DNA from: Podarcis erhardii
Lineage: Eukaryota
Assembly: GCA_964252035.1 (NCBI GenBank)
Contig: OZ176211.1
DNA: 64,000 nucleotides
Strand: one strand, 5' to 3'
This document shows, in pieces, positions 18,001 through 21,000 of the stretch. Made by a program: the position numbers and the translations under genes. Within the stretch, counting starts at the first letter, position 1. Each line of letters starts with the position of its first letter. The notes under the pieces were generated by a model that did not search any database, was not told the DNA's origin, and saw only the letters and a list, made by a program, of their open reading frames with translations.

Positions 18001-21000
18001 AATTACTACGTCACAAAATGATGCATGTCTAAAAAGAGTGCCACCAATATGAAAAGTTTGGAAAGCTCTGGGCTAGAGGAAGTCTCTGGATGAAAGCAAC
18101 AACCTGTAGACAACTTAACTTCGACTTAAGAGTGTAACCATTTCAAAATTACAATTGAAAACCCAGTGACTCTTACTTATGATGCTAAGCAGAACATGAC
18201 TAGTTAATGAGTTGTTTTTTCATCCCAGGGCTGGTGCAAACCTTTCTGTCTCTTAAACAGTGTTAGGGGAATATAGCCTTTGCATACACACCAAAAAACC
18301 TTACACAATTTGAAAGTGAGGTTCTGTCATTTCCTACTCCCATAAAAGAAATTGGGGTACAGGCTTTTGTAGCAAAATGTTGAACGTGCCGTGCATCATA
18401 CTTCTGCAAAATATGCTCTTAACCTGTTCTTTATATTACTCAGCTCTGTTTTTCCCATTTTGTTATGTGCTGAATATAATGTAAATCATGTCTGCTTGTC
18501 TTTTGGCTGTTCTAAGCTGAGGAAACAGTTGAGTGTGGTAGGTGTTTTACCCCCCCCCCTTTTATTCTTCCATTATGTCTTCAGTCCATGTAATCACTTT
18601 GCATCCTATTTTTCCCCCTTTTGCGCTTCTCAGAGGAAATTAAAGGTACATGTACAAGTTTCCCTGCTGGGCTGCAAGTGATGGCTTAAAAACTAAGTAT
18701 TCTAGGTCATCACTGACTTAGAGGCAATTAGAAAATAATCCATATAGATAGCAGTATATGTAGTCATAACAGCCAGTTGCTTTGTTGTTGCTGGAATTGT
18801 TGTTCCAGTCCTGAGAATCGTGGTAGCAGAAGACTGTGAACCTGTTGCTTTCTGCACGTAGTTTCTTCAGCACAGTACTGGCATGTGTGCATGAAGATTC
18901 CTGTGGGGTAAGGCACAGGGATCCACATGTGTTATCCCATTGTCAGATGTGGTTTCTTCCTTTGTATTTTTCCTTCTTACATAGCAGGAATTTGCCTGTT
19001 TCTGCACATGGGTCAAGTATGCAGAACAGGAGTGAATGTGTGCTAAAACCTCTGAATGTTAGCAAAGTAACATAACTGAACAAAGCAGATATGTTAACAC
19101 AAGACATTTCCATGGAGCTAAAGATGATGTCAGTCCTATTGCATGGCTCTAATAGATTATCTTTCTTAAATTCAAACTTTGACACTGAATAAAGTGGATC
19201 TTTTCCAGTCATTAGGGGTGCAATTTTGGAACACAGCTTGACAGATGCTTTACTGCTGTGTCAATCTTTAGGGGACTTTTCACTTGCAGCATACATTTAA
19301 ACAGTTGTAGCTCACTGANNNNNNNNNNNNNNNNNNNNNNNNNNNNNNNNNNNNNNNNNNNNNNNNNNNNNNNNNNNNNNNNNNNNNNNNNNNNNNNNNN
19401 NNNNNNNNNNNNNNNNNNNNNNNNNNNNNNNNNNNNNNNNNNNNNNNNAGTATTTTGTTAGACATTTGGTATATTAAATAGGCACCAATACTATTTTATA
19501 CCTAAGAAGTTATATTCATTAAAAATACCCTTTATGTCTGATCCATTGAGCCAAATAGAAAAACTCCAGATATTCTTTGTAGATTTCTTTACCTTTGTGT
19601 TTCAGCTGTTGAATGTTTTATCCTACATTAAAATATAAAGTAGAACATCTTTTAAAATCACTTCTTTATTTTCTGTCATGAATAAGGCAATAAAACAGTG
19701 AAAAGTTAAATATGCATGCTGCTGTACTCCAAAATCTCTTGCTCAACTTCAGAACAACACAATGATTTATTTTTAAGCAGTAGCATATTGAAGGCTTTTT
19801 ATGCTGTGCTTTCTGCAGTTGTCATTTTTAAGTAACTCTTCTTTTGCATTCATGGCTGGGCATCTAACTATTCTGCTTTATTTCTTGGCTTTTGTTCTGT
19901 ACGCTTTTACACTTCATCCAGAGGAAGCTGAATGTGCTGGTCACAACAGTGGAGCCCACATAGGTGAGCAGTTGCTTACAAAAGACTCTCTTTCTTTCTC
20001 AGCTTTTTCCTGGATGGCTACAGAGTTTGCAGGTAATGGGCATCACTGCATGCAATGAATCTGCTAGATTAAAAAATGGCTCACTGGATTTGACACAAAG
20101 GATCTGCATCCTAACCGCAACATATGTTACTAACATTGAAATATAGAATGCATTGAAATGCTACCTTGAATATGAGGAAATAATTTACTTGGGTAGAATT
20201 TGCAAATAAATTTAAATACTTGTCCTAGACAAAATGCTAGGCTGGCTATATTCCATCTGACTACATTATTTTTCTATCACAGTGTTCTTCAATCTTGGGT
20301 CCCAGATGATATTGAACTACAACTCCCATCAACCCTTATCATTGAATAAGCTGGTAGGAATGGTGAAAGTTGTAATCTCGTGACTTAGTGTAGGGATAGC
20401 CATTGTGGTACCTGACACATGTTGTGGGCTACAATTTTCATCATCCCTGACCATTGGCCACTCTGACTTGAGTTGGTGGCTCCATAACATCTAGAGGGTA
20501 CCACGTTGGCTATTGCTGACTTACAGGGAATTAAGTTAGTACTGTTGGATGGCTGGGGTTACTTTCTTGTCAATGAGCCAAGTAATGATACCACGGACTG
20601 GCTCATCTTTGCTCACCTATTCTTGAAGTGGTTTACTGGTAATTCCTTAGAAGATGCTACACAAGAACCATTGTAAGTTGAACATACCATATCAGGTTTT
20701 CTTTATTCTTCAAGGAAGGGATGTGGGAAGAGGACACAAATTATTGGTAAGAATTGGCCCATATTGGGGGATAAAATGGGGTAGAATAGGGAAGGAGGTT
20801 GAGATCATGGTGATGCAGGAACTACTCAGGGTAAATCAGCAGCACAAGAGTAGGTGGAAACTAATTGAGGGCATGCTACATTATTAATATATCAATGTCA
20901 CATGTTTTATTAAAGGGGAAGGTGGCACTGCAAATGGGTAGACTGGTAGAGAGGTTTGTGTGTCACCATGCTTCCAGATAGATTTTAGAAGCTGTGCAGT

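What the first reader, a model, noticed from the sequence alone, without database searches (positions are those of the whole stretch)
18517..19963. Hidden 21-nt + 42-nt cassette exon pair adding an MPP3-like insert to the MPP7 HOOK domain
Seen: two small exons with good splice sites (AG|...|GTAGGT and AG|...|GTGAGC), both phase 1 to 1, inside an 11.8-kb intron and not evident as exons from the ORF track. Together they change KS-S-GFRRSF into [30 protein letters not shown] (+21 aa, acidic, two Cys, two His). Recalled human MPP3 has a segment of the same 22-residue length here (YDQPCDKETCDCEGYLKGHYVA-GLRRSF), with E, C, G, G and A in register. The canonical human MPP7 sequence I recall lacks it. 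Established: HOOK inserts in MAGUKs (e.g. DLG1 I2/I3/I5) change partner binding and localisation. Inference: an ancestral MPP3/MPP7 exon pair kept as a regulated module in this lineage.
Basis: partly seen in the sequence, partly recalled or inferred. Interest (0 to 1): 0.74.

Follow-up and report, generated by a model that had tools for sequence, protein, structure and literature searches.

The report
Known MPP7 HOOK mini-exon module
The two small exons are real and very old alternative exons of the scaffold gene MPP7, but public gene models of this lizard and of more than a hundred other vertebrates already contain them, so the finding is a sound annotation and not a discovery.

Summary
Exon A (18517-18537, 21 nt) and exon B (19922-19963, 42 nt) have AG/GT sites. 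Both are phase 1 to 1 and add 21 residues between the SH3 exon and the basic HOOK motif. The N gap (19319-19448) lies in the intron between them and touches no exon.

Splice sites alone do not exceed chance. Other evidence shows the exons are genuine:
- The predicted peptide is identical to RefSeq/UniProt MPP7 isoform X1 of Podarcis muralis (597 aa).
- Homologous inserts are modelled from sharks to mammals.
- Both exons and their flanks are conserved in an agamid and a tinamou.
- Transcript contigs of another tetrapod carry the insert.

The words "hidden" and "in this lineage" do not hold.

One is a conserved 12-nt microexon (18634-18645). The other is a 30-nt squamate exon (20003-20032), the only one with a splice joint in the reads I laid. 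I obtained no RNA evidence for A or B in this species.

What the acidic insert does next to the basic HOOK motif is inferred, not shown.

Novelty: already known. Interest is low.

The parts
13977..14041 (+). Constitutive MPP7 exon (end of the SH3 / start of the HOOK linker). It ends in phase 1 with a T.
   Evidence: It matches P0154 residues about 297-317. The donor is GTAAGT.
18517..18537 (+). Exon A: a 21-nt alternative microexon, phase 1 to 1, reading S + EETVEC.
   Evidence: 18 of 21 bases are identical to the tinamou and to the agamid, with identical flanking AG and GTAGGTG. It is present in P0154.
18634..18645 (+). Microexon M: 12 nt, phase 1 to 1 (reads EEIK between A and B).
   Evidence: 11 of 12 bases are identical to the tinamou exon that encodes the EEIE piece of the 601-aa bird isoforms. 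AG and GTAC are intact in the lacertid, agamid and tinamou. No lacertid model that I saw includes it.
19319..19448 (.). Assembly gap (N), intronic, between M and B.
   Evidence: The flanks are collinear with L005. The gap was not filled or read.
19713..19718 (+). UGCAUG (RBFOX-type motif) about 209 nt upstream of exon B.
   Evidence: It sits at the same relative place in the agamid (210 nt) and the tinamou (216 nt).
19922..19963 (+). Exon B: a 42-nt alternative exon, phase 1 to 1. A further AG at 19926-19927 would give an in-frame 36-nt form starting at 19928.
   Evidence: 36 of 42 bases are identical to the tinamou and 39 of 42 to the agamid. About 100 nt of upstream intron is nearly identical. 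It is present in P0154.
20003..20032 (+). Exon C: a 30-nt alternative exon, phase 1 to 1 (S + FSWMATEFA), used in the 586-aa lacertid isoforms.
   Evidence: P0243, P0273. One search shows a GT..AG splice joint 20032 to 25823 in run X3 at depth 24. It is open in the agamid but not frame-preserving in the tinamou.
20047..20052 (+). UGCAUG 84 nt downstream of the B donor and 15 nt downstream of the C donor.
   Evidence: It is conserved in position in the agamid (86 nt) and present in the tinamou (112 nt).
25823..25993 (+). Constitutive exon with the basic HOOK motif ([11 protein letters not shown]...), phase 1 to 1.
   Evidence: It is 100% identical to P0154 residues 339-396.

Best explanation
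Exons A and B are the lizard copies of an ancient, alternatively spliced mini-exon module in the HOOK linker of MPP7. Public gene models of this species and of jawed vertebrates in general already contain it.

In this window the module has four parts between the constitutive exons that end at 14041 and start at 25823:
- A, 21 nt.
- M, 12 nt.
- B, 42 nt.
- C, 30 nt, squamate only.

Combinations give proteins of 576 aa (all skipped), 583 aa (A only; modelled in Anolis, predicted here), 586 aa (C) and 597 aa (A+B). A 601-aa form (A+M+B) is modelled outside squamates.

The pair A+B predates the split of MPP3 and MPP7.

Shown: the anatomy, the conservation, the identity to annotated isoforms, the MPP3 exon match, and transcript contigs with A+M+B in another tetrapod.

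Inferred (about one chance in three each):
- The insert is a flexible acidic stretch (net charge -6, or -7 with M) placed directly before a basic cluster of net charge +8. It may damp or mask that cluster's contacts with FERM/4.1-type partners, calmodulin, acidic lipids or the SH3-GK unit.
- Inclusion may be restricted to certain tissues (neural or endocrine, perhaps RBFOX- or SRRM4-dependent).
For: Identity to known models:
- P0154 (XP_028607220.1 / A0A670J7G2, P. muralis isoform X1, 597 aa) carries the same peptide as the window's A+B.
- All MPP7 exons in the window match it.

Breadth:
- Among the best 120 hits the linker length falls into discrete classes: skip, B' only, A only, A+M, A+B and A+M+B. 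These span sharks to mammals.

Genomic conservation:
- A, M and B keep intact sites and phases in the tinamou L002 and the agamid L005.
- The flanks are 78-85% identical.

Paralogy:
- MPP3 in L001 has the same 21 + 42 nt pair.

Transcripts:
- The Logan contigs L003 and L004 hold an uninterrupted 586-codon reading frame with A+M+B.

Regulation:
- A mouse Mpp7 21-nt microexon is classed NEURAL-UP, with inclusion of 0.13 against 0.40 in islets (PMC8395343 supplement).
- UGCAUG motifs flanking B are conserved.

Analogy:
- HOOK inserts I2/I3 of SAP97/DLG1 change localisation and the response to calmodulin (PMC9307800).
Against: - No RNA evidence for A or B in this species. In four runs the only splice joint found was C to the downstream exon. 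No contig covered 19905-20002 at all. That hole may be a filter artefact, so it counts neither for nor against.
- The newer P. muralis accessions that I saw cover only the 586, 584, 576 and 546-aa forms. A+B may therefore be rare or restricted to certain tissues.
- I could not map the mouse 21-nt microexon onto exon A. Only its length and gene agree.
- The structure prediction was too poor to say anything about disorder or docking.
- The Tyr at the start of the insert and the Tyr near its end, conserved elsewhere, are replaced in squamates. Function may have drifted in this lineage.
Confidence: 0.9

Rival explanations
1. Chance pseudo-exons: open AG..GT stretches that are never spliced.
For:: the intron has 602 open candidates, and nine have sites as good; no junction for B in four runs.
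Against: The peptide is identical to annotated isoforms. Sequence, sites and phase are conserved over roughly 280 million years (my dating) in L002 and L005. The MPP3 gene has the same exon pair. Transcript contigs carry the insert.
Confidence: 0.02
2. In lacertids A and B are relics that are now barely used. Exon C would have taken over as the main HOOK insert, and the A+B models would rest on homology.
For: The only joint seen is C to the downstream exon. The newer P. muralis accessions cover the C, skip and shorter forms only. Squamates lost the two conserved Tyr and, in the models seen, do not use M.
Against: A, M and B keep open frames, intact sites and strongly conserved flanks in both a lacertid and an agamid. 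That is not expected of unused sequence. A+B models exist in Anolis, Pogona, Crotalus, Paroedura and Podarcis.
Confidence: 0.12
3. The module acts mainly as a dose control. Joining the upstream exon directly to M or to the full B makes a stop codon (T + AG), so such transcripts would be degraded. Splicing choice would then set MPP7 level and not protein form.
Against: Most taxa have an in-frame escape: a tandem acceptor 3 nt downstream gives the widely modelled 589-aa B' form. The lizard has an in-frame AG 6 nt downstream. The peptide itself is under clear constraint across vertebrates.
Confidence: 0.1

Closest known systems
RefSeq/UniProt MPP7 isoform X1 of Podarcis muralis and P. raffonei (XP_028607220.1, A0A670J7G2, XP_053266571.1; 597 aa)
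   Same: The peptide across the upstream exon, A, B and the downstream exon is identical. This is the same feature.
   Different: Nothing in the A+B part differs. These models do not include M, and exon C is in separate 586-aa models.
601/600-aa MPP7 isoforms of birds, turtles, crocodiles, mammals, frogs and sharks
   Same: They have homologous A and B, at the same position before the basic motif and with the same acidic character.
   Different: They also include the 12-nt M piece and start with Tyr where squamates have Ser. They have a tandem acceptor that allows a B-only form of 589 aa.
MPP3 HOOK segment (for example P0111/P0064, parrots)
   Same: It has a 21-nt plus 42-nt exon pair, phase 1 to 1, with GTAGGT and GTGAG donors. 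It gives a 22-residue segment with shared Y/E/D/C/G/G/Y/I-A positions.
   Different: It is a paralogous gene. No M-like exon was seen. Models without the segment exist, but they may be prediction misses.
SAP97/DLG1 HOOK insertions I2, I3 and I5
   Same: They are alternative small exons in the disordered linker between SH3 and GK that change localisation and partner or calmodulin response (PMC9307800).
   Different: They are not homologous. The DLG1 inserts are net basic, whereas the MPP7 insert is strongly acidic. No functional data exist for MPP7.
Mouse Mpp7 21-nt microexon (chr18:7430395-7430415), classed NEURAL-UP
   Same: It is in the same gene and has the same 21-nt length. Mouse models X5/X6 contain the EETVEC peptide.
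   Different: I could not place its coordinates relative to the HOOK intron, so the equivalence is inferred.

Membership tests
Annotated MPP7 HOOK alternative-exon module | Lies in the intron between the SH3-end exon and the exon that starts the GFRRSF basic motif. | tested here: met
Annotated MPP7 HOOK alternative-exon module | The encoded peptide matches the insert of the annotated isoforms. | tested here: met
   It is identical to P0154 and homologous to over 100 models.
Annotated MPP7 HOOK alternative-exon module | Orthologous exons with the same size, phase and splice sites occur in other genomes. | tested here: met
   Tinamou L002 and agamid L005.
Annotated MPP7 HOOK alternative-exon module | Spliced into mRNA in this species. 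| tested here: inconclusive
   One search shows only the C-to-downstream joint and a hole in coverage over B. Transcript contigs with the insert exist only for another tetrapod.
MPP3/MPP7 ancestral exon pair | The paralog has exons of the same lengths and phases at the same position. | tested here: met
   L001 has a 21-nt exon at 9961-9981 and a 42-nt exon at 11261-11302.
MPP3/MPP7 ancestral exon pair | Present before the vertebrate duplications (invertebrate chordate ortholog). | tested here: inconclusive
   The amphioxus MPP7 model P0095 shows no acidic insert, but it is a single model that may simply skip it.
SRRM4/eMIC-dependent neural microexons | Length of 27 nt or less. | tested here: met
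   A is 21 nt and M is 12 nt. B (42 nt) and C (30 nt) are longer.
SRRM4/eMIC-dependent neural microexons | A UGC motif between the polypyrimidine tract and the acceptor AG. | tested here: inconclusive
   M has UGC about 12 nt before its AG in the lacertid and tinamou but not in the agamid. A has none close by.
SRRM4/eMIC-dependent neural microexons | Inclusion enriched in neural or endocrine tissue and dependent on SRRM3/4. | not testable with these tools
   The only pointer is the mouse table entry NEURAL-UP for a 21-nt Mpp7 exon.
RBFOX-regulated exons | Conserved UGCAUG within about 300 nt of the exon. | tested here: met
   Motifs at 19713 and 20047 are conserved in position in L005 and L002. 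Local enrichment is weak (P about 0.03).
RBFOX-regulated exons | Splicing responds to RBFOX. | not testable with these tools
   No data.

The most novel reading that the evidence does not exclude
The four mini-exons may form a graded electrostatic switch with a built-in order rule.
- A must be included for M or the full-length B to be read, because otherwise a stop codon forms.
- The resulting inserts would step the charge next to the +8 HOOK cluster from 0 to about -7. That would tune MPP7 binding to FERM proteins, calmodulin or membranes by tissue.
- Squamates would have rewired the switch: they lost both Tyr, lost the +3 tandem acceptor, and gained the neutral, hydrophobic exon C.
Probability: 0.2. 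Interest if true: 0.5.

Novelty: already known. Interest (0 to 1): 0.2.

Why it matters
The finding adds little beyond correct annotation, because the A+B isoform is already in public models of this species and its relatives.

Three things give modest value:
- The paralogy with MPP3 is now supported by exon size and phase.
- The lizard has a conserved 12-nt microexon that is not in the lacertid models I saw.
- I found no study of what an acidic insert next to the basic HOOK motif does to any MPP protein. A MAGUK laboratory could test that easily.

Tried and rejected
- The word search with the 57-residue downstream exon alone returned only single-exon reading frames from genomic contigs. These say nothing about splicing.
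- The exhaustive search with the same exon gave the first full-length proteins with the insert.
- Look-ups of non-longest isoforms were not on record. One look-up failed and was repeated.
- The run search was made with mostly intronic sequence, so no run on record as RNA was offered.
- Reads were laid on 19905-25904, chosen to avoid the N gap. There was no joint for B, and no contig covered B or its flanks. The tool warns that conserved stretches can be filtered, so I treat this as no evidence either way.
- AlphaFold2 on P0154 with a 46-row alignment gave a mean pLDDT of 41.6. The model is unusable and no fold search was made.
- A metal-binding reading of the Cys/His residues was rejected because these residues are not conserved.
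Exons were searched by reference, and the comparison with full-length proteins used database entries.
- I took no contig for human and fetched no human sequence.
- I deliberately did not fetch Podarcis genomic loci, so that the gap's letters were not read from another copy.

Full report
**Observation**

- The constitutive exon 13977-14041 ends in phase 1 with a T, before GTAAGT.
- Exon A is 18517-18537: 21 nt, AG before it and GTAGGT after it.
- Exon B is 19922-19963: 42 nt, CAG before it and GTGAGC after it.
- The next constitutive exon starts at 25823. Its end is 25993, not 25996.
- Both small exons are open and phase 1 to 1. Together they add 21 residues directly before the basic GFRRSF motif.

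**The gap**

The only N run in the window, 19319-19448, lies in the intron between A and B, far from either exon. No frame crosses it.

Sequence on both sides of the gap matches the orthologous intron of an agamid lizard on the same strand and in the same order.

**Is it more than chance?**

Not by splice sites alone. The 11.8-kb intron holds 602 open AG..GT stretches whose length is a multiple of three. Nine of them have both sites at least as good on a crude matrix. The case rests on the comparisons below.

**What it is**

An exhaustive protein search with the downstream exon returned full-length MPP7 proteins that carry a homologous insert. Cluster look-ups and two word searches then showed three things.
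- The window's A+B peptide is identical to MPP7 isoform X1 of Podarcis muralis (XP_028607220.1, UniProt A0A670J7G2, 597 aa) and of P. raffonei.
- All MPP7 exons in the window, from residue about 45 to the end, match P. muralis models. The window is therefore from that species or a very close relative.
- Insert-bearing isoforms are modelled in sharks, gar, sturgeon, lungfish, frogs, salamanders, turtles, crocodiles, birds, marsupials and placentals.

The linker length in the database falls into discrete classes:

| Class | Protein length |
|---|---|
| All skipped | 576 aa |
| A only | 583 aa (Anolis) |
| A plus a 4-residue piece (M) | 587 aa |
| B-only form | 589 aa |
| A+B | 597 aa |
| A+M+B | 600/601 aa |

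**Genomic comparison**

In a tinamou MPP7 locus (L002) and an agamid locus (L005), A and B have the same lengths, phases and splice-site sequences as here.
- Exon A is identical at 18 of 21 bases to each.
- Exon B is identical at 36 of 42 bases to the tinamou and 39 of 42 to the agamid.
- The flanking intron is 78-85% identical over some 250 nt.

The 4-residue piece of the longer isoforms is a separate 12-nt microexon, here called M. It lies about 100 nt after A in the tinamou.

The lizard window has its counterpart at 18634-18645. It is identical at 11 of 12 bases, with a strong pyrimidine tract, CAG before it and GTAC after it. It is also intact in the agamid.

A fourth exon, C (20003-20032, 30 nt, phase 1 to 1), encodes the extra ten residues of the 586-aa lacertid isoforms. 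It is open in the agamid but not frame-preserving in the tinamou.

**MPP3**

A parrot MPP3 gene (L001) has a 21-nt exon with a GTAGGT donor and a 42-nt exon with a GTGAGA donor. Both are phase 1 to 1 and lie between an exon ending in T and the exon that starts GLRRSF.

A single amphioxus model shows no such insert, which is not decisive.

**RNA evidence**

- Two Logan transcript contigs (L003, L004; the protein is closest to salamander models) carry an uninterrupted reading frame with A+M+B.
- For this lizard I have no RNA evidence for A or B. Of four runs laid on 19905-25904, one (X3) shows a clean GT..AG joint from 20032 to 25823. That is exon C spliced to the downstream exon, at depth 24 against an intron depth of 7-10.
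- No run shows a joint from 19963, and no contig covers 19905-20002 at all. Since conserved stretches can be filtered out by the tool, that hole is not evidence of absence.
- The 597-aa form appears only under older P. muralis accessions and under P. raffonei. The newer P. muralis accessions that I saw cover the 586, 584, 576 and 546-aa forms. A+B may thus be rare or restricted to certain tissues.

**Regulation (inferred)**

- A supplement table of PMC8395343 lists a 21-nt Mpp7 microexon in mouse. It is classed NEURAL-UP, with inclusion of 0.13 against 0.40 in islets of two strains. Its length fits exon A, but I could not map it.
- Two UGCAUG motifs keep their position relative to exon B in the lacertid, agamid and tinamou: about 210 nt upstream and 84-112 nt downstream. 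This fits RBFOX-type control by established position rules.
- M has a UGC shortly before its AG in two of the three species.

**Frame logic**

Joining the upstream exon directly to M or to the full-length B creates a stop: T+AG here, T+AA in the tinamou.

Most other vertebrates have a tandem acceptor 3 nt into B that restores the frame and gives the common 589-aa form. The lizard lacks that AG but has one 6 nt in, at 19926-19927, which would also be in frame. No model uses it.

**Likely mechanism (inferred, about one chance in three)**

The insert is acidic, with net charge -6, or -7 with M. It sits directly before a cluster of net charge +8. In related MAGUKs the HOOK linker binds FERM/4.1 proteins (PMC7662862). 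It also binds calmodulin and governs the SH3-GK interaction, and alternative HOOK inserts of SAP97/DLG1 change localisation and calmodulin response (PMC9307800).

An acidic insert could therefore mask or weaken the basic motif. The structure prediction was too poor to help (mean pLDDT 41.6).

The acidic residues and the short C-terminal SG-x-Y-I/L-A motif are conserved. Squamates have replaced both conserved Tyr.

Exons were searched by reference. No human sequence was fetched or compared.

**Verdict**

The exons are real, ancient and already annotated. The claims of a hidden and lineage-specific feature do not hold. Interest is low.

Noticed in passing
window 18634-18645: A 12-nt microexon (M) between A and B. 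Its splice sites are conserved in the agamid and the tinamou. It is absent from the lacertid models seen. Joined directly to the upstream exon it would give a stop.
   Followed up: yes
window 20003-20032: A 30-nt exon C used in the 586-aa lacertid isoforms. It is the only exon of the module with a splice joint in the laid runs (X3, 20032 to 25823).
   Followed up: yes
window 19713-19718 and 20047-20052: UGCAUG motifs flanking exon B, conserved in position in the agamid and the tinamou. They are possible RBFOX sites.
   Followed up: partly
window 19926-19928: An internal AG that would give an in-frame 36-nt form of B joined directly to the upstream exon. Birds and mammals use a tandem acceptor at +3 instead. 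No model uses the lizard site.
   Followed up: partly
window 20305-20504 and 24905-25304: High-copy repeats inside the intron. Contig depth there is 700-3900, against 7-10 elsewhere.
   Followed up: no
P0041 (Chloebia gouldiae) and P0242 (Crotalus horridus): Deposited protein models that read through the intron just upstream of exon B before joining the downstream exon. These are probably annotation errors.
   Followed up: partly
P0049 / P0106 (mouse MPP7 isoforms X5, X6): Short 363/364-aa models that begin in the intron just upstream of exon A. This suggests an internal start or retained intron giving a HOOK-GK-only protein.
   Followed up: no
window 21225 and other places in 20880-25800: The runs of organism A differ from the window by about 3% and by small indels, for example 13 letters put in behind 21225. 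They come from a related population or species, not from the source animal.
   Followed up: no
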